Shown in pieces: positions 29,121 through 35,711 of a stretch of DNA of 64,000 bases. The position numbers and the translations under genes were made by a program. The first letter of the stretch is position 1. Each line of letters starts with the position of its first letter. The notes under the pieces were generated by a model. That model saw only the letters and a list, made by a program, of their open reading frames with translations. It was not told the DNA's origin and made no database searches. The DNA lies in assembly GCF_048593235.1 (NCBI RefSeq), contig NC_133617.1:267862937-267926936 (forward strand). Direction: 5' to 3'. The DNA comes from Sminthopsis crassicaudata. Taxonomy: Eukaryota.

Positions 29121-29662
29121 TTTGATTAATCTTTGTGGTTTTTCAGATGATTTTATACCATCAAGGAAGGCATGAATGATGGAACAGTTAAAAAACTTGG
29201 GTTCTGGTCTTAGATTTGCCACTATCTATTTAGGCAAACTACTTAAGTTGGCTGGGTCTCAGTGTCCTCGTCTTTAAAATAATGAAGTTAGATAAGATGA
29301 TTTCTTAAGATTTTTTCATTTCTAACGTTCCTTGATTCTAACAGAAAAACTGGTGTATGTGTGTGTTTCATCTTATTCAGGTCATTCTGTATAATCTTTC
29401 AAGAACGTGCAACCAGACCATGGACACTGATATTAAGACAGGATTCCTAACCTAGAAACATTTTTAAAAATACATCTTTAATGTTCAGAAAAAATGATTT
29501 TAATTTAATTTAAAATTCTTTAGGAGTTAATGATAGTAATAGAAGAGTAAAGAGTAAAACATAAATTGGGATTACTTTGTAGAGTCATCTCAGTACTACA
29601 AATTGACAATAAGATTTGGGGTGTATATTCAAGGAAACATCACAAGGACAATATTCATTGAT

Positions 29663-30071
29663 TGTTAGGATTACTAAGTGAGAACTGAGGTTGTCTGGAT
29701 AGTGACAAGGTGAGAATTCAGGTTTTCTGGACAATTACAAGGTGAGAACTCAGGTTGACTTGATAGAGGGGGCAAGCTCATTGGCTGGGGTGGTTCTTCC
29801 CAGAAGCCCTTGCATTATCCCACGCCCATTCTCTGGGAGAATAAAAGAAGAGGACTCTCAGAGAAAGAGGAAGACTCTGAATTGCATCAGGCTTGACGGG
29901 GCTCTCTGCAGGAAGGGAAGTCACTTCTTTGGACAAGAGTTAACAGCAACTGCCTGGAGACAACGGTTCATTACAGGAAGAAGAATCTGTCGGAGAGATT
30001 TGAGTAGAAGACACAGCAGATCTCTTCCCAGAGAGCGATCCAGCAGCTTCTGGAGACGACAGCTCGCTACA
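29663..30071 (+). repeat. 5' LTR (409 bp)
   Basis: TGTTAGGATT...CTCGCTACA; no mismatch to the 3' LTR found by eye; 32-bp U3 repeats, ATTGG (reverse CCAAT), CACGCCC, AATAAA at 29840-29845. Confidence 0.97.
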
Positions 30072-30073
30072 TT

Positions 30074-30091
30074 TGGCGCCCAACGTGGGGC
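30074..30091 (+). promoter_or_regulatory. Primer-binding site 1, tRNA-Lys1,2 (CUU)
   Basis: TGGCGCCCAACGTGGGGC, 2 nt after the LTR-terminal CA; the known 18-nt Lys1,2 PBS of MPMV/HERV-K. Confidence 0.97.
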
Positions 30092-30143
30092 AAGGACTTT
30101 TACTTATCCTGACAAGAAGAGCTAGACTCAGACCTTTGCAATT

Positions 30144-30161
30144 TGGCGCCCGAACAGGGAC
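30144..30161 (+). promoter_or_regulatory. Primer-binding site 2, tRNA-Lys3 (UUU)
   Basis: TGGCGCCCGAACAGGGAC, the known 18-nt Lys3 PBS of HIV-1/MMTV; preceded by ...TTTGCA-ATT. Confidence 0.95.
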
Positions 30162-30226
30162 AGACACAGTCCTGATTCCAGTGGAAAAGCTTCCAATCTA
30201 GATCTCAGTCTCTCTGACCCAGAACC

Positions 30227-30233
30227 GTGAGTA
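30227..30233 (+). promoter_or_regulatory. Candidate retroviral major splice donor
   Basis: AACC|GTGAGTA between the PBS and the gag ATG, the usual position of the major donor. Confidence 0.6.
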
Positions 30234-30329
30234 ACGAGGAAACTTTGTTAAAGATTAAGTGAGCGTGCTAATAGATAAATAAGGAACTTAACTTGTTAAG
30301 GGCTAAACCAGGAATCTCTTATAGCTGAA

Positions 30330-32153
30330 ATGGGGCAGATGTTAGCTATATTCAATCCCTGGACCTCAGCCGACTCAACCTCAGCCCCAGACGCAACCTC
30401 AGCTCCATTCAGGAGTGGTACTATAGAGAGTATAATCAACATAATTGAGGAGCAGAGTTTACTTGTAACCTGGGTACAGATTGCTAAACTCTTGGCTGCA
30501 TTAAAACGCACATCCCCTTGGTTCTTAGAGGAAGAAAAGATAGATGTAGATAAATGGAAGCTAGTGGGATATGAAATGAAAGAATTTCAAGCAAAAAATG
30601 GGCCTCGTTCAATTTCTGCAGAAGTATTTTATATCTACAACATAGTTCAATTAGCCTTAAACTATCAAGCAAGTTGTAGGAGAAGGAAAAGTTCTAAAAA
30701 TGAACAGAGGAGGAAGTGTGAGGAAAAAAGGAAAGATCAAGATCTTTCCCTAGAGCAAGAGGATTTAAATGAGGAATTATGGTATGATTCTCTTGAAGAA
30801 GCTTCAACCCTGCCTAGAGAACAGATTATTGACAGGCCCACATCAACCCCACCTTCAGAGATGGAGGAAGAAAGAGGGGAAGAGGCAGAAACACAAACAG
30901 AATTGCCTGTGAAGCAGCCTAAGCCTATGACAAGATTAGAAAAAGCATTGGTTAAAGCTAAGAGAGAAGGACAGGATATAAGTGATTTTATACATGCATA
31001 TCCTGTGATTGAAAATACTGACTCTGTAGGTAAAAAAAGGAGAAGATATGCACCTTTAGATTTGAATAAAATTAAGGATTTGAAAAAAGGTTGTACCCTT
31101 TATGGGGCTACATCAGCTTATGTCAAAATGTTACTAGATGGTTTGTCTTATGAAGTCCTAACCCCGAATGATTGGAAATCCATAGCAAGGACATGTCTGG
31201 AACCTGGAGAAAATTTATTATGGCTTGCAGAATTTCATGAATTATGTAAAATTCAAGTCAGATGCAATTTGGAAATAGGAGTTAACACACAATTCACTTT
31301 TGAGCACTTAGCTGGTGAAGGTCAGTATGGGGAGAATTCGGAACAGATTAATTATACCATGACAATATATGAACAAATTGCTAAGGCTGCAATAAAAGCT
31401 TGGGGTGTCCTTCCTGGACAGAAAGATCGTGGAGAGGCTTTCACTAAAATACAGCAAGGTCCCAATGAACCTTTTGCAGATTTTGTGGGACGTTTGCAAA
31501 CTGCTGTTAAAAGAACTATTGGAGAAAATTCAGCTACAGAAATAATGACCAGACATCTGGCTAAGGAAAATGCCAATGAGATTTGCAAAAGAATTATATG
31601 GGGATTAGACAAAGATGCTCCTTTAGAGGAGATCATAAGACGCTGTGCTACAGTGGGAACAAATGCTTTTTACACCCGGACAATGATGAATGTGGAAAGA
31701 CAGGGTCCCTCCTGGCAAAGGCCTTCTAGAGAAACTCGGCGATGTTTTCAATGTGGAAAAATTGGGCATCTAAGAGCTCAGTGTAGGTATGGAGATACAG
31801 TGAGAAGACAGGGTGAAAGAAGACCTAAAACCCCATGTCCAAAATGCAACAGAGGATTCCATTGGGCATCAGAGTGTAGAATAATTCAGGGAAATGGGAT
31901 GAGGGGCCCAGGTCCAGGGCCCCAGGCAAAAAAGACTTGGGGCATGATGGCAGCTGATGTTACACCCAAAGAACCTTTAGAAGGCCAGGACTCTGATTTA
32001 ATCAATCAGCAGAGAAGCAATCACAAGGCAGAAAGGGATTACCTGATAAGTCAGTCAAAAGGCAATCAGATTGCAAAAATGGATTACACTTGGGGAGAAT
32101 ACAGGCCTTTTAAACCAACAGGGCTGTGCCCAGTGCAAACAACTCCAATGTAA
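30330..32153 (+). CDS. gag: Intact Gag polyprotein, 607 aa (MA-linker-CA-NC-tail), betaretrovirus-like
   Basis: Strong Kozak gaaATGG; MGQ myristoylation-type start; MHR IQQGPNEPFADFVGRLQ (31449-31499); CX2CX4HX4C knuckles at 31743-31784 and 31836-31877; no stops or frameshifts. Confidence 0.97.
   Translation: MGQMLAIFNPWTSADSTSAPDATSAPFRSGTIESIINIIEEQSLLVTWVQIAKLLAALKRTSPWFLEEEKIDVDKWKLVGYEMKEFQAKNGPRSISAEVFYIYNIVQLALNYQASCRRRKSSKNEQRRKCEEKRKDQDLSLEQEDLNEELWYDSLEEASTLPREQIIDRPTSTPPSEMEEERGEEAETQTELPVKQPKPMTRLEKALVKAKREGQDISDFIHAYPVIENTDSVGKKRRRYAPLDLNKIKDLKKGCTLYGATSAYVKMLLDGLSYEVLTPNDWKSIARTCLEPGENLLWLAEFHELCKIQVRCNLEIGVNTQFTFEHLAGEGQYGENSEQINYTMTIYEQIAKAAIKAWGVLPGQKDRGEAFTKIQQGPNEPFADFVGRLQTAVKRTIGENSATEIMTRHLAKENANEICKRIIWGLDKDAPLEEIIRRCATVGTNAFYTRTMMNVERQGPSWQRPSRETRRCFQCGKIGHLRAQCRYGDTVRRQGERRPKTPCPKCNRGFHWASECRIIQGNGMRGPGPGPQAKKTWGMMAADVTPKEPLEGQDSDLINQQRSNHKAERDYLISQSKGNQIAKMDYTWGEYRPFKPTGLCPVQTTPM
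31889..31923 (+). promoter_or_regulatory. gag-pro-type -1 ribosomal frameshift signal
   Basis: In-frame heptamer G GGA AAT (31889-31895), 7-nt spacer, then stem GGGGCCC (31903-31909), loop AGGTCCA, GGGCCCC (31917-31923). Same layout as the SRV-1/MPMV G GGA AAC site at the QGN motif. Confidence 0.75.
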
Positions 32154-32160
32154 TTGTCAG

Positions 32161-32350
32161 ATGATGAGAAGAGATTTAGAAAGTGGTAAATAGAAGGAAA
32201 TTAGATAGGTTAACTGCCTGGGAGAGAGGGTTTGCTTGTATTTCTTCAGCAGGAGAAGGAATCAGATGGGTGCCAACGAGTCATATTCGCCTTATCCACC
32301 AGAGAGAGACAGAAAAAGAGAAAGACCTCAAAATAAAGGAGAAGATCTAA
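32161..32350 (+). pseudogene. pol: Integrase C-terminal domain remnant (pol 3' end)
   Basis: MMRRDLESGK*KE, a +1 shift, then LDRLTAWERGFACISSAGEGIRWVPTSHIRL...*. Resembles the class II IN motif W..D....W..P..L..WGRGFAC....W.P.. Confidence 0.8.
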
Positions 32351-32643
32351 GAAACATCTGACACTGAAATAGCATGGATAATAAGAAGACTGTTAAAGAT
32401 CTTTAAAAACCAGCAGGAATCATTGGACTTTCTCACACAAGATGAGACTAATGGACAATGGACTTATGGACATTTATAAATTTTCAATTTATGATTATTT
32501 GATTATGTTATTTGTCATATACTTCTAGCATGTGTTACGCTACTATGTTACTATGTGCTTATGTAATTTATGTAATTATCTGTAATACTTCCCATATTGA
32601 TGGATTTAGGTTTCAAGGTCATGACTGTCCTATGTTCTAAATC

Positions 32644-32659
32644 AAAAGAAAGGGGGAGA
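32644..32659 (+). promoter_or_regulatory. Polypurine tract
   Basis: AAAAGAAAGGGGGAGA just upstream of the 3' LTR. Confidence 0.92.
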
Positions 32660-32664
32660 TTCGA

Positions 32665-33073
32665 TGTTAGGATTACTAAGTGAGAACTGAGGTTGTCTGG
32701 ATAGTGACAAGGTGAGAATTCAGGTTTTCTGGACAATTACAAGGTGAGAACTCAGGTTGACTTGATAGAGGGGGCAAGCTCATTGGCTGGGGTGGTTCTT
32801 CCCAGAAGCCCTTGCATTATCCCACGCCCATTCTCTGGGAGAATAAAAGAAGAGGACTCTCAGAGAAAGAGGAAGACTCTGAATTGCATCAGGCTTGACG
32901 GGGCTCTCTGCAGGAAGGGAAGTCACTTCTTTGGACAAGAGTTAACAGCAACTGCCTGGAGACAACGGTTCATTACAGGAAGAAGAATCTGTCGGAGAGA
33001 TTTGAGTAGAAGACACAGCAGATCTCTTCCCAGAGAGCGATCCAGCAGCTTCTGGAGACGACAGCTCGCTACA
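32665..33073 (+). repeat. 3' LTR (409 bp)
   Basis: Copy of the 5' LTR at offset +3002; followed by TSD ATTGAT. Confidence 0.97.
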
Positions 33074-35711
33074 ATTGATATAGAGGATAAAAGCTTGACA
33101 GTATGTTTTTAAACAGGCACTACTAGAGAAGGAGCTTGAACATCATATCAAGGAATCCAGGGGAGACTTACGTGGCCATGATGTTGCAAGTAAATCTGAA
33201 GTTTTATTTAGTTGTGCTTCTGTCGGCCTACAAGAGTTAGAGTGACAAATACACTAGGAATCATCACTACCTAGTGTAATGTATGTATTGCACTACTTAG
33301 TAGTGCAATGTAAGCATAGTGAAAACTTCACAAACATTTTATGAACAAAAAGAGTAACCTGAACCAGGTTTATCCATAAAATTTCATATTCCCAAATAAA
33401 AACAGCAAGAAGTGCCATGATGGGTCTTAAGAATTCAACATCAATTTGTTGATGTTGAAGGCAACAGAGAAACAGAAGTAATACTTAGACAATAGCACCC
33501 AAACATAGAGCCTAAATATTGGTTGCTGAGAAAGGGCACTGACTATATTAACATGGATTGGCTCAGTTTGAATAAGATGCTTTTTCTAGACTATGAAGAA
33601 GACAAGGCAGAGCTTTAAATAGTTCTACTAATCCATATAGAGACTTCAAATCATTCCTGTAGTGTTGGGGTTTTTTCCATTCATATTATCATCAGGTAAT
33701 CAAATAAGTGTAGAATTATTGTAGTGTATTTTATGCATTCTAAAGGAGGAAGTAGGAAATTCATATGACAAAATGGTAAAGAAAGCTTCATTACCAGAAA
33801 GAGGTCAGATTTTTTTTTTTCCTTTTTTGATGGAATTTCCATATGATGTGAATATATTACTTTTAGACTATACAAACTATAGGTATATTTTAGACATTTT
33901 GTTAATCTCATTCTTTTTATGTCTAATCCTAATCTTGAACTCATGCATGACTCTTTCCCTCCCTCTAATTATCTATTATGATGAAGTAATACAGCTTTAA
34001 TCATCAACTCTGATTCAGCTTTCCTGTTGTTTTTTTATTTTTCCTGTAGTTGGTTATTATTTGGACTTAAAATATAAAAGTCACCAACTGACTGGGAATT
34101 TTATGCTGGTTTATAGGAAGTAAATGAGACTAGACACATTTTTATAAGTATCTGTCTCTATTTCATTGCAACACTCCAGGCACTGCCTTCAAACTGGAAC
34201 TGAAAGCTGTCTACATATGTGCCTATTTGCAGTTCTATTTAGTGGCTGTATCATACCTGACTTTTGAGTATAGTGTTACTTCTGTTTTCCAAGAGTATAT
34301 GTCTCAGTGACAGAGTTTCTTTGTCAGAAACTTTATCACCAGAAATAGTAGTGTCCTAGGAGCCATAGGGATGTATTCTAGGATCTCAGATCCTTACCTG
34401 AAGCCCAAACATAGCTTTAAAAAAGCCCGTAAGTGGTTACTGAACTAGCATTGTATGTATCTGGAAATGTAAAATGTGGGTGTGAGGGGAGGATAAGTTT
34501 TGAATTGAGGTTAAAAATGGCAGAAGAGAGGACTCATTCACTTCTGCTCAGGTACAGTTGAGGTTGAGTCTGAAGAAGGGAACCTTTCAGCAGCCAGAAC
34601 CATGCCTAAAGAAAGGCTTGTATAAGTTTTGGGGGGAAAAAAAAAAAAACAGGAGTCAAAGGGAACATAGTCCATCTTCTTTCACCAATTTTCTCTCTAA
34701 AGTCCACTCCGAGAAGTAAGTTTTAGCAACTTCCAGAGGCTGTTTTATCTTCATAGGAAAAGAAGGGGCTTTTTGTGATCATCACTGTGCTCTTGCCTCA
34801 TTCTTTAAAATGGCAGAGGAAGGGGAAGGAAAAGTCATAAAATGAACAAAGCTTACATTTCAGATTAATTTAATAGACTTAGGATGTTAAGATTCCTTCT
34901 GAGCTTCCCACCTGTTCCTCATACATAAAACTTCTTTAAGGAAAAGAACCCTTCAATACACAATTCAAAATGCAGGCAAATGCCTGGATGAGGTAATACT
35001 TTAGTGTAAATGAATTTCCGTTCAAATATAATCAGTCATTCCATCAATAAGTATGAGTGATTGGTTATCAGATCTTTCCCTGTTTTAATAGGGGGGGATG
35101 GGGTGAAGAGAAGAGGAGGCTGGGGGCAGAAGACAAAATTTCAGGCTTCCCAACTTTGCCTAGGGTAAGCCCTACTTGCCTTCAACTGGGCTGGGTCAAA
35201 TAGGAGGTGGTGCACTAAGTCATTTTTGTCCAAGAGGGATAAACCCAGACAATTCTGCTTTATGGAGTTTTTGATTTTTTTTTTTTCCCCTAAAGTAAAA
35301 CTGAATTTATATAAATGGGTGTCTTTCTCAGGGAGATATCATTATACATGTATTTTTCACTTCCCAAGGCAATGTCATATTCCAAAAATATAACTACAGA
35401 AGAATTTGGACCCTGTAAAAGAGGGCCTCATTTCCACTTCTCTCTTCCATGTGTCCGAGAAGAGGAAATTAATCCTATTTATCAAGCTTTGGCCATGAGT
35501 GATGACTTTTCATCTTAGTTTTTCTTGTATTTGTTGTTATTTCTTGAACATTAAACAATGCTATTTTTGGAGTAGTGAGGGAGGTGGGGTCTAAGTTCTA
35601 TAACTATTAACAGATTATTTAGCTTGTTTGATTCAAGAGGTAAAGGACAAGGGTAAGTTGATGAATAGGGATTCTGTTTGTTTTTCAAGGATTATTATTT
35701 TATTCTTTTAG

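What the first reader, a model, noticed from the sequence alone, without database searches (positions are those of the whole stretch)
30070..30161. Two perfect, different tRNA-Lys primer-binding sites in tandem, each behind a CA end
PBS1 TGGCGCCCAACGTGGGGC (Lys1,2; 30074-30091) follows the LTR end CTACA-TT. After a 52-nt spacer, PBS2 TGGCGCCCGAACAGGGAC (Lys3; 30144-30161) follows TTTGCA-ATT. Both are 18/18 matches, which cannot be chance. Retroviruses normally have one PBS. This copy was primed at PBS1, because its 3' LTR ends at CTACA. Priming at PBS2 would produce a longer 478-bp LTR (29663-30140) that ends in ...GACCTTTGCA and contains PBS1. The element may thus have switchable priming, giving two LTR lengths, which could match helper Pol enzymes with different tRNA preference or evade PBS-directed silencing (KRAB-ZFPs, 3' tRNA fragments). 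Alternatively the spacer plus PBS2 is a fossil U5-PBS from a recombination that put new LTRs on an older internal region. I do not know of a described dual Lys1,2/Lys3 ERV family, but cannot search the literature.
Basis: partly seen in the sequence, partly recalled or inferred. Interest (0 to 1): 0.92.

Follow-up and report, generated by a model that had tools for sequence, protein, structure and literature searches.

The report
Marsupial retroelement with two primer sites
A young gag-only endogenous retrovirus of a dasyurid marsupial (most likely the fat-tailed dunnart) has two different tRNA-Lys primer-binding sites in a row, and sister copies show that both have started reverse transcription, giving short or long LTRs from one kind of RNA.

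Summary
Window 30074-30091 and 30144-30161 are 18/18 identical to the published PBS strings for tRNA-Lys1,2 and tRNA-Lys3. They sit behind the 5' LTR of a 3,411-bp gag-only class II (betaretrovirus-like) element at 29663-33073. Its LTRs are identical 409-bp copies and it has a 6-bp target duplication, ATTGAT.

I fetched eleven sister copies from the Sminthopsis crassicaudata genome. All ten that keep the leader carry both sites, so this is a family trait and not an assembly chimera.

Ten elements, the window's included, have short 3' LTRs ending just before PBS1. Nine of them have perfect 6-bp duplications; the tenth, L007, is 5'-truncated. One copy, L003, has 469-bp LTRs that include PBS1 and the spacer. 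They end at the CA three bases before PBS2 and are flanked by their own perfect 6-bp duplication.

One member, L004, is full length (gag-pro-pol) and has the same double site. A related family, L011, has 93% identical Pol but a single Lys1,2-type site.

Not shown: how the second site arose, whether selection maintains it, or why. Papers on the host ERV clade do not mention PBSs, and I found no natural precedent. I rate it a new variant of a known kind. The PBS2 evidence rests on one copy.

The parts
29657..29662 (+). Left target-site duplication ATTGAT
   Evidence: Identical hexamer at 33074-33079
29663..30071 (+). 5' LTR, 409 bp, TG...CA
   Evidence: 100% identical to 32665-33073
29678..29766 (+). 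32-bp tandem repeat, 2.8 copies, in U3. It recurs at 32680-32768 in the 3' LTR.
   Evidence: Tandem Repeats Finder. LTR length varies from 405 to 465 bp among the measured sister copies.
30072..30073 (+). TT dinucleotide between the LTR-terminal CA and PBS1
   Evidence: In sister copies this is TT, AT or GT.
30074..30091 (+). PBS1, 18/18 complementary to the 3' end of tRNA-Lys1,2. It is the major priming site.
   Evidence: String identity with published PBS-Lys1,2. 10 of 11 elements have 3' LTRs ending just upstream of it.
30092..30143 (+). 52-nt spacer. A CA lies at 30139-30140, followed by ATT. The spacer becomes the end of U5 when PBS2 is used.
   Evidence: No detectable similarity to the U5 end.
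30144..30161 (+). PBS2, 18/18 complementary to the 3' end of tRNA-Lys3. It is the minor priming site.
   Evidence: String identity with published PBS-Lys3. Sister copy L003 has LTRs that end 3 nt upstream of it, with their own duplication.
29663..30140 (+). Extent of the alternative long LTR (478 bp) that this RNA would give if primed at PBS2. It is not realised in this copy.
   Evidence: By homology with the 469-bp LTRs of L003
30162..30329 (+). Rest of the untranslated leader
   Evidence: 92-97% identical in the same-subfamily sister copies and 84% in L009. The last ~77 nt are also recognisable in the related family L011.
30330..32153 (+). gag, an uninterrupted 607-codon ORF starting MGQ. 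It has matrix p10, capsid p24 N- and C-terminal domains and two CCHC zinc knuckles.
   Evidence: 98% identical to S. crassicaudata XP_074143667.1. pN/pS is 0.2-0.4 among intact copies. The best solved relatives are betaretroviral and HERV-K capsids.
32154..32643 (+). Non-coding tail: the remnant left after loss of pro-pol, plus the 3' untranslated region
   Evidence: 88-97% identical in sister copies. Part of it is homologous to the pol 3' end of the full-length relatives L004 and L011.
32644..32659 (+). Polypurine tract (plus-strand primer)
   Evidence: Purine run conserved directly before the 3' LTR in all copies
32665..33073 (+). 3' LTR, 409 bp, ending ...CTACA (short form, primed at PBS1)
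33074..33079 (+). Right target-site duplication ATTGAT

Best explanation
The window holds a very recent insertion of a non-autonomous, gag-only deletion derivative of an env-less class II (betaretrovirus-like) endogenous retrovirus of dasyurid marsupials. Its genomic RNA carries two complete minus-strand primer-binding sites in tandem: PBS1 for tRNA-Lys1,2 right after U5, and PBS2 for tRNA-Lys3 70 nt further on.

In each replication cycle either site can start minus-strand DNA. A start at PBS1 is the usual case and gives the short LTR ending ...CTACA. A start at PBS2 adds PBS1 and the spacer to U5. Both LTRs of the new copy are then about 68-70 bp longer, contain PBS1 and end at the CA three bases before PBS2.

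Transcription begins in R of the 5' LTR and polyadenylation occurs at the R/U5 border of the 3' LTR. A long-LTR provirus should therefore make the same RNA as a short-LTR one. On this reasoning LTR length records which primer was used in the last cycle and is not inherited (inferred).

Reverse transcriptase and integrase are supplied in trans by full-length relatives such as L004 (inferred). Gag is supplied by the element itself.

Shown: the anatomy, family-wide presence of both sites, and integrated products of both kinds, each with its own target duplication. Inferred: that tRNA-Lys3 itself was the primer at PBS2, that RNA from long and short proviruses is the same, and that Pol acts in trans.
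For: PBS identities.

Element anatomy: identical LTRs and a 6-bp duplication; intact gag with betaretroviral domains.

Family: 11 further elements of this family from S. crassicaudata GCA_048593235.1. All 10 that retain the leader carry both sites at the same spacing.

Short products: the window plus L001, L002, L004, L005, L006, L008, L009 and L010, each with a perfect 6-bp duplication, and the 5'-truncated L007.

Long product: L003 has LTRs of 469 bp with 3 mismatches. PBS1 is 18/18 in both LTRs, the LTRs end at the CA before PBS2, and the duplication is TCTAGC/TCTAGC. The right end of retroviral DNA is set by the 5' end of minus-strand DNA, so this end places the primer at PBS2 (established reverse-transcription model).

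L003 still has a Lys3-type PBS2 at 18/18.

PBS2 contains two CpGs but is no more diverged than its surroundings. Mean pairwise difference in the 8 younger copies is 0.027, against 0.047 for the spacer and 0.044 for the next 60 nt.

A candidate Pol source exists: L004 has the same LTR, double PBS and gag, plus an uninterrupted 889-codon pol with RT, RNase H and integrase domains.

Other class II ERVs switch or mix the two Lys subtypes: SERV genotypes and mouse ETn versus ETnERV2/MusD.
Against: Only one of eleven elements is of the long type, so use of PBS2 rests on a single integration.

The CA before PBS2 is followed by 3 nt (ATT), not the 2 nt seen at PBS1 in most copies. L009 also has 3 nt at PBS1.

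The dunnart's own tRNA-Lys genes were not seen, since no tRNA gene lies in any fetched DNA. Complementarity is therefore to the published eutherian strings.

The conservation figures have little power, because most copies are very young. In the older copies L008 and L009 both sites have decayed equally, by 3 and 2 changes each.

The R boundaries and poly(A) site were not mapped. No expression data were available.
Confidence: 0.8

Rival explanations
1. PBS2 is a fossil left by a recombination that put a new LTR and PBS1 in front of an older U5 end and PBS. It is not maintained for priming. L003 is then a rare accident, for instance tRNA-Lys1,2 mispriming on the partly matching PBS2, since the first 8 nt of the two sites are the same.
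For: LTRs turn over much faster than the interior in this family. LTR identity to the window is 72-98%, against 92-99% for gag and leader, so LTR exchange or rapid U3 change is common. The CA plus 3 nt before PBS2 looks like a former U5/PBS junction. Only 1 of 11 copies is long. The related L011 family has a single Lys1,2-type site.
Against: PBS2 is 18/18 to tRNA-Lys3 in 6 of 8 young copies despite two CpGs. The double site has persisted through several LTR subfamilies and about 8% gag divergence, as in L009. L003 kept a Lys3-type PBS2, whereas priming by another tRNA would rewrite it in about half of the products (reverse-transcription model). No LTR whose U5 ends in the spacer sequence was found in about 230 kb of fetched DNA. 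A fossil origin would not exclude present use.
Confidence: 0.15
2. PBS2 is kept mainly for a job other than priming, such as a Gag-binding packaging signal in the leader. Its occasional use as a primer site would then be a by-product.
For: In mouse mammary tumor virus the PBS itself is one of two Gag-binding sites needed for genomic RNA packaging, at the level of primary sequence (PMC8096270). The element keeps its own gag under purifying selection, with pN/pS of 0.2-0.4, so Gag-RNA recognition in cis is plausible.
Against: Nothing here tests it directly. The leader fold is no more stable than shuffles, z = +1.3. The related family L011 manages with one PBS.
Confidence: 0.1
3. Assembly chimera or sequencing artefact joining two leaders.
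For: None found.
Against: The same arrangement lies at 10 other loci on four chromosome records, each with its own flanks and duplication.
Confidence: 0.01

Closest known systems
MEBrv 3, the env-less endogenous betaretrovirus amplified in Dasyuridae (Harding et al. 2024, PMC11334065)
   Same: Same host family, and reported intact in the fat-tailed dunnart. It is class II, gag-pro-pol without env, about 7 kb, with identical LTRs and an IAP-like intracellular lifestyle. The full-length relatives found here (L004 at 6.4 kb, L011 at 6.9 kb) fit that description.
   Different: The paper does not mention a PBS or tRNA anywhere (0 occurrences). It does not describe gag-only derivatives or LTR length dimorphism. 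I could not compare sequences, because no accession for its representatives was available to the tools.
Mouse ETn / MusD (ETnERV2) and other non-autonomous class II ERV derivatives
   Same: A deletion derivative that shares LTR and leader with a coding-competent relative and depends on its Pol. The two mouse families use different PBS-Lys subtypes, MMETn Lys1,2 and ETnERV2 Lys3. This shows that one class II machinery can serve both primers.
   Different: In the mouse each element has one PBS. Here both are on the same RNA, and the derivative keeps an intact gag under selection.
PBS switching in simian endogenous retrovirus (SERV) and VL30
   Same: Lys3 and Lys1,2 sites alternate within one ERV lineage. 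Mutated Lys1,2 sites with a 1-nt insertion occur, like the PBS1 variant of L001, L004 and L008.
   Different: In those families the sites alternate between copies and never occur together in one copy.
Engineered retroviral vectors with two primer-binding sites (Voronin and Pathak, J Virol 2004; title seen in the reference list of PMC4227088)
   Same: Two PBSs on one RNA, with initiation possible at either.
   Different: Those are laboratory constructs. The paper itself is not held, so I take nothing from it beyond its title. The present case is natural, germ-line and family-wide.
Bipartite or second tRNA-binding sites of Gypsy and Ty3 (PMC1635307)
   Same: More than one tRNA-binding site per genome.
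   Different: There the second site lies at the 3' end of the RNA and pairs with another part of the same tRNA. In Gypsy it does not start cDNA synthesis.

Membership tests
Class II (betaretrovirus-like, ERVK-type) endogenous retrovirus | Gag with matrix p10, capsid p24 and two CCHC zinc knuckles | tested here: met
   Pfam Gag_p10, Gag_p24, Gag_p24_C, zf-CCHC_5 and zf-CCHC. The best solved relatives are betaretroviral and HERV-K capsids.
Class II (betaretrovirus-like, ERVK-type) endogenous retrovirus | Primer-binding site for a lysine tRNA | tested here: met
Class II (betaretrovirus-like, ERVK-type) endogenous retrovirus | LTRs TG...CA with a 6-bp target duplication | tested here: met
   Met in 10 of 10 complete copies.
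Class II (betaretrovirus-like, ERVK-type) endogenous retrovirus | Class II Pro and Pol (protease, RT, RNase H, integrase) | tested here: not met
   Absent from the window element. Present in the relatives L004 and L011. The best solved matches there are a 618-residue 'Polymerase' chain 7sr6 (E = 6.5e-154) and retroviral integrases.
Class II (betaretrovirus-like, ERVK-type) endogenous retrovirus | dUTPase in pro | tested here: inconclusive
   No Pfam dUTPase hit in the ORFs of L011 or L004 that I scanned. Not all frames were scanned.
MEBrv 3 (Harding et al. 2024) | Env-less gag-pro-pol ERV of about 7 kb with near-identical LTRs in dasyurid genomes, including the fat-tailed dunnart | tested here: met
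   Met for the relatives: L004 is 6,386 bp and L011 is 6,886 bp, each with 1 LTR mismatch. The window element is a 3.4-kb derivative.
MEBrv 3 (Harding et al. 2024) | Sequence or phylogenetic placement with the published representatives | not testable with these tools
   No accession or sequence of the representatives could be fetched.
Non-autonomous deletion derivative mobilised in trans | Lacks pol but shares LTR, leader and 3' tail with a pol-encoding relative | tested here: met
   L004 against the window: LTR 95%, leader 96%, gag 95%, tail 92%, plus 3.26 kb of pro-pol.
Non-autonomous deletion derivative mobilised in trans | Recent transposition without its own pol | tested here: met
   Four gag-only copies have 0 LTR mismatches and intact duplications.
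Retroelement with two functional minus-strand priming sites | Integrated products of both priming sites, each with its own target duplication | tested here: met
   Nine short-LTR copies with duplications, one 5'-truncated short copy, and one long-LTR copy with a duplication. The long class has n = 1.
Retroelement with two functional minus-strand priming sites | The host tRNAs pair with both sites | not tested
   No dunnart tRNA gene lies in the fetched DNA. Identity is to the published eutherian PBS strings only.

The most novel reading that the evidence does not exclude
The tandem Lys1,2/Lys3 arrangement is maintained by selection as a bet-hedging device. An element that depends on others' enzymes and on host tRNA supply, and that is exposed to PBS-directed host silencing (3' tRNA fragments, KRAB-ZFPs), keeps two interchangeable start sites so that loss or blockade of one does not stop replication. 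LTR length would then be a readable, non-heritable record of which primer was used in each germ-line transposition. This would be a natural system for studying primer tRNA choice.
Probability: 0.25. Interest if true: 0.85.

Novelty: new variant of a known kind. Interest (0 to 1): 0.7.

Why it matters
Retroviruses and LTR retrotransposons are taught as having one primer-binding site, and how the primer tRNA is chosen is an old open question. This is a natural, recently active family in which one RNA offers two different tRNAs a full 18-nt site, and the genome keeps a record of each choice in the length of the LTRs. A census of long and short LTRs would give the relative use of the two primers in the germ line without any experiment. 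It also matters for annotation. LTR libraries and age estimates that assume one LTR length will mis-call the long form, and PBS-based classification would assign the family to two primers at once. The host clade is the most abundant and still active ERV group of dasyurid marsupials, where ERV activity has been discussed in connection with genome instability.

Tried and rejected
1. Tandem duplication of U5-PBS as the origin. The spacer shows no similarity to the U5 end, and the sequences after the two sites show none either: local alignment scores were at or below the shuffle means. A recognisable recent duplication is rejected. An old one cannot be excluded.

2. A donor LTR whose U5 ends in the spacer. 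None was found among the LTR types in the fetched loci.

3. RNA structure of the leader. The minimum free energy is no better than shuffles, z = +1.3, and Rfam gave no hit in the window.

4. Cross-species check in the Tasmanian devil. Locus L012 holds an L011-type fragment that lacks its 5' end, so it says nothing about the leader. An unrelated LTR with a Lys1,2 PBS abuts it on the other strand.

5. Looking for host tRNA-Lys genes in the window and loci. None were found.

6. Literature. Six searches for natural double PBSs (and 44 for marsupial betaretroviruses) were swamped by 'PBS' meaning buffer and by prime editing. The only relevant items were Gypsy/Ty3, the engineered vectors (title only; PMC400373 is not held), SERV and the KRAB-ZFP paper.

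The other DNA collections do not hold marsupial genomes, and I did not spend scans on them.

Full report
**Observation**

The two 18-mers are present exactly as described: PBS1 at 30074-30091 and PBS2 at 30144-30161, separated by 52 nt. I did not rely on memory for their identity. The same strings are printed as the PBS for tRNA-Lys1,2 and for tRNA-Lys3 in PMC8775094 and PMC1084362. The 8-mer they share occurs nowhere else in the window, against 0.06 expected.

**The element**

- Two direct repeats, 29663-30071 and 32665-33073, are 409 bp long and identical. They begin TG and end CA.
- They are flanked by the hexamer ATTGAT on both sides.
- Between them lie the two PBSs and a leader.
- Next comes one uninterrupted 607-codon ORF at 30330-32153. 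It has Gag_p10, Gag_p24, Gag_p24_C and two CCHC knuckles.
- After the ORF come a 0.5-kb non-coding tail and a polypurine tract at 32644-32659.
- The element is 3,411 bp. Gag is intact. Protease and polymerase are missing through one large internal deletion relative to full-length relatives. No env is present in any member seen.
- CpG observed/expected is 0.25 in the element and 0.08-0.09 in the flanks. Together with the identical LTRs, this points to a very recent insertion.

**Host and family**

The Gag protein is 98% identical to annotated proteins of Sminthopsis crassicaudata, the fat-tailed dunnart, a dasyurid marsupial. The window's exact protein is not in the collection, so I call the host a dasyurid, most probably this species.

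Using the annotated Gag proteins I fetched eleven further elements of this family from assembly GCA_048593235.1 (L001-L010). I also fetched one element of a related family (L011) and one Tasmanian devil locus (L012).

- Nine of the family members are gag-only elements of 3.2-3.6 kb, like the window's.
- L007 is 5'-truncated.
- L004 is a 6.4-kb full-length member.
- Among the gag-only copies, four including the window's keep a full-length gag ORF of 607-609 codons. The others have shorter products. I did not itemise their breaks.
- Intact gag genes differ with pN/pS of 0.2-0.4, so Gag is under purifying selection in this pol-less family.

**The double PBS is a family trait**

All ten sister copies that retain the leader have both sites at the same relative position.

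- PBS1 is 18/18 in six of the eleven elements. L001, L004 and L008 share a variant with one substitution and a 1-nt insertion. L008 and L009 also carry extra transitions, mostly at CpG.
- PBS2 is 18/18 in six elements. L002 has a 1-nt insertion and L010 one CpG transition. The old copies L008 and L009 have three and two changes.
- In the eight younger copies PBS2 is no more diverged (0.027) than the spacer (0.047) or the next 60 nt of leader (0.044), although it holds two CpGs. The power of this comparison is low.

The arrangement is also found in L009, whose gag is 92% and whose LTR about 72% identical to the window's. It has therefore survived several LTR subfamily turnovers.

**Both sites have been used**

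The right end of retroviral DNA is fixed by the 5' end of minus-strand DNA, that is, by where the tRNA primer sat (established model). Ten elements have 3' LTRs ending at the CA just before PBS1: the window, L001, L002 and L004-L010. Nine of them have a perfect 6-bp duplication, and L007 lacks its 5' end.

L003 is different:

- Its 3' LTR continues through a perfect PBS1 and the whole spacer and stops at the CA three bases before where PBS2 would be.
- The two 469-bp LTRs (5343-5811 and 8431-8899) differ at 3 positions.
- The element is flanked by TCTAGC on both sides.
- PBS2 itself follows only the 5' LTR and is still 18/18 Lys3-type.

I see no recombination route that would end a 3' LTR precisely at that CA, next to a matching duplication. 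The observed ratio is 10 short to 1 long.

The 3-nt gap (ATT) before PBS2, against 2 nt at PBS1 in most copies, may make the long end a poorer integrase substrate. Competition between two annealed primers may also favour the upstream site. Both points are inference. L009 has 3 nt before PBS1 as well.

**Consequence for the life cycle (inferred)**

The RNA starts in R of the 5' LTR and ends at R of the 3' LTR. A long-LTR provirus therefore transcribes the same R-U5-PBS1-spacer-PBS2 leader as a short one. LTR length would then be reset in every cycle and is not inherited. The long:short ratio in the genome would estimate primer usage directly.

**Source of enzymes**

L004 has the family's LTR (95%), double PBS, leader (96%) and gag (95%). 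It also has a 3.26-kb block that is 91% identical to the pro-pol of L011.

- L004 reads as a 785-codon gag-protease ORF and an uninterrupted 889-codon pol with RT, thumb, RNase H and all three integrase domains. Its closest solved structures are a retroviral polymerase chain and retroviral integrases.
- L011 is a 6.9-kb env-less gag-pro-pol element with 301-bp LTRs and the duplication GTCAGT. Its Gag is only 56% identical, and it has a single, slightly decayed Lys1,2-type PBS.
- The two Pol proteins are 93% identical.

One Pol lineage is thus associated with both the single-site and the double-site leader. This gives no support to the idea that the two sites serve two different helpers. Devil Gag proteins are closer to the L011 type (71%) than to the window type (60%). 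This suggests that the single Lys1,2 site is the older state and that the spacer and PBS2 were gained in the dunnart-side lineage. The devil locus lacked its leader, so this is not shown.

**Origin of the second site**

Origin is unresolved. There is no detectable similarity between the U5 end and the spacer, or between the sequences after the two sites. No LTR with a spacer-like U5 end turned up in the fetched DNA. A CA followed by 3 nt and a PBS does look like a former U5/PBS junction. LTRs in this family diverge far faster than interiors, so acquisition by recombination is plausible. L009 shows that the spacer can change: it carries a tandem duplication of about 50 bp there.

**Comparison with what is known**

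The host clade matches MEBrv 3 of Harding et al. 2024: env-less, about 7 kb, IAP-like, amplified in all Dasyuridae, and intact with identical LTRs in the fat-tailed dunnart. That paper contains no mention of PBS or tRNA, and I could not compare sequences.

- Switching between Lys3 and Lys1,2 between copies is documented for SERV.
- The non-autonomous/autonomous mouse pair ETn and ETnERV2 use different Lys subtypes.
- Two PBSs on one RNA are known from engineered vectors (title only).
- Gypsy and Ty3 have a second site of a different kind.
- In eight literature searches I found no natural LTR element with two complete, different PBSs in tandem. The searches were noisy, so absence from the literature is not proven.

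**Function**

Known mammalian KRAB-ZFPs that bind PBS-Lys tolerate the five central positions where the two subtypes differ. Two sites also offer two targets. Simple evasion of such repressors is therefore not an obvious benefit. The shared PBS1 variant with an inserted base resembles the SERV variants that have been discussed as escape from tRNA-fragment repression. A non-priming role of PBS2 as a Gag-binding packaging signal, as shown for the MMTV PBS, is a reasonable rival or additional role. None of this is tested here.

**Verdict**

The thing is a new variant of a known kind. The main weakness is that PBS2 use is documented by one copy. A genome-wide census would settle frequency and selection.

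Noticed in passing
window 32660-32664: The window copy has 5 extra bases (TTCGA) between the polypurine tract and the 3' LTR. All other copies lack them and read ...GGGGGAGA directly before TG. The 5' LTR nevertheless starts at the usual TG next to the duplication. It is unexplained how the plus-strand primer and left end were defined in this copy.
   Followed up: partly
L004:5338-11723: A full-length member of the double-PBS family. It has gag and protease in one 785-codon ORF and an uninterrupted 889-codon pol, with 1 LTR mismatch. Its pro-pol is 91% identical to L011, although the gag genes are only about 70% identical, so there is a mosaic (recombinant) history between the two families.
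   Followed up: partly
L001:3745-3763, L004:5745-5763, L008:6496-6514: Three copies from different LTR subfamilies share a PBS1 variant with one C-to-T change and a 1-nt insertion. Two of them are very young (0 and 1 LTR mismatches) and have short LTRs, so the imperfect site seems still to have been used or passed on. Similar inserted-base variants of PBS-Lys1,2 are reported in SERV.
   Followed up: partly
L009:9208-9329: In this older subfamily the spacer between the two PBSs is longer and contains a tandem duplication of about 50 bp. Both PBSs show CpG decay.
   Followed up: no
window 29678-29766 and 32680-32768: A 32-bp tandem repeat (2.8 copies) in U3. LTR length varies from 405 to 465 bp among the measured sister copies, while the interiors are 92-99% identical. 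LTRs therefore evolve or are exchanged much faster than the rest.
   Followed up: partly
L011:9869-9904: In the related single-PBS family the Lys1,2-type site is followed at once by a second TGGCACCC... stretch that matches neither PBS beyond the first 8 nt. Its meaning is unknown.
   Followed up: no
L012:13417-13560 (minus strand): In the Tasmanian devil locus, an unrelated LTR end followed by a truncated Lys1,2 PBS abuts, in reverse orientation, the truncated pol of an L011-type element. This is a nested or rearranged insertion.
   Followed up: no
window 8471-8611 and 11771-12142: Two runs of N (gaps or masked). ORF 11762-12211 in the ORF list overlaps the second run and is meaningless.
   Followed up: no
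window 39848-39890, 41829-41869, 48153-48237, 53022-53897: Two (TG)n microsatellites, a 42-bp repeat (2 copies), and a 291-codon ORF on the minus strand with no Pfam match. The rest of the window is AT-rich (about 33% G+C) and strongly CpG-depleted.
   Followed up: partly
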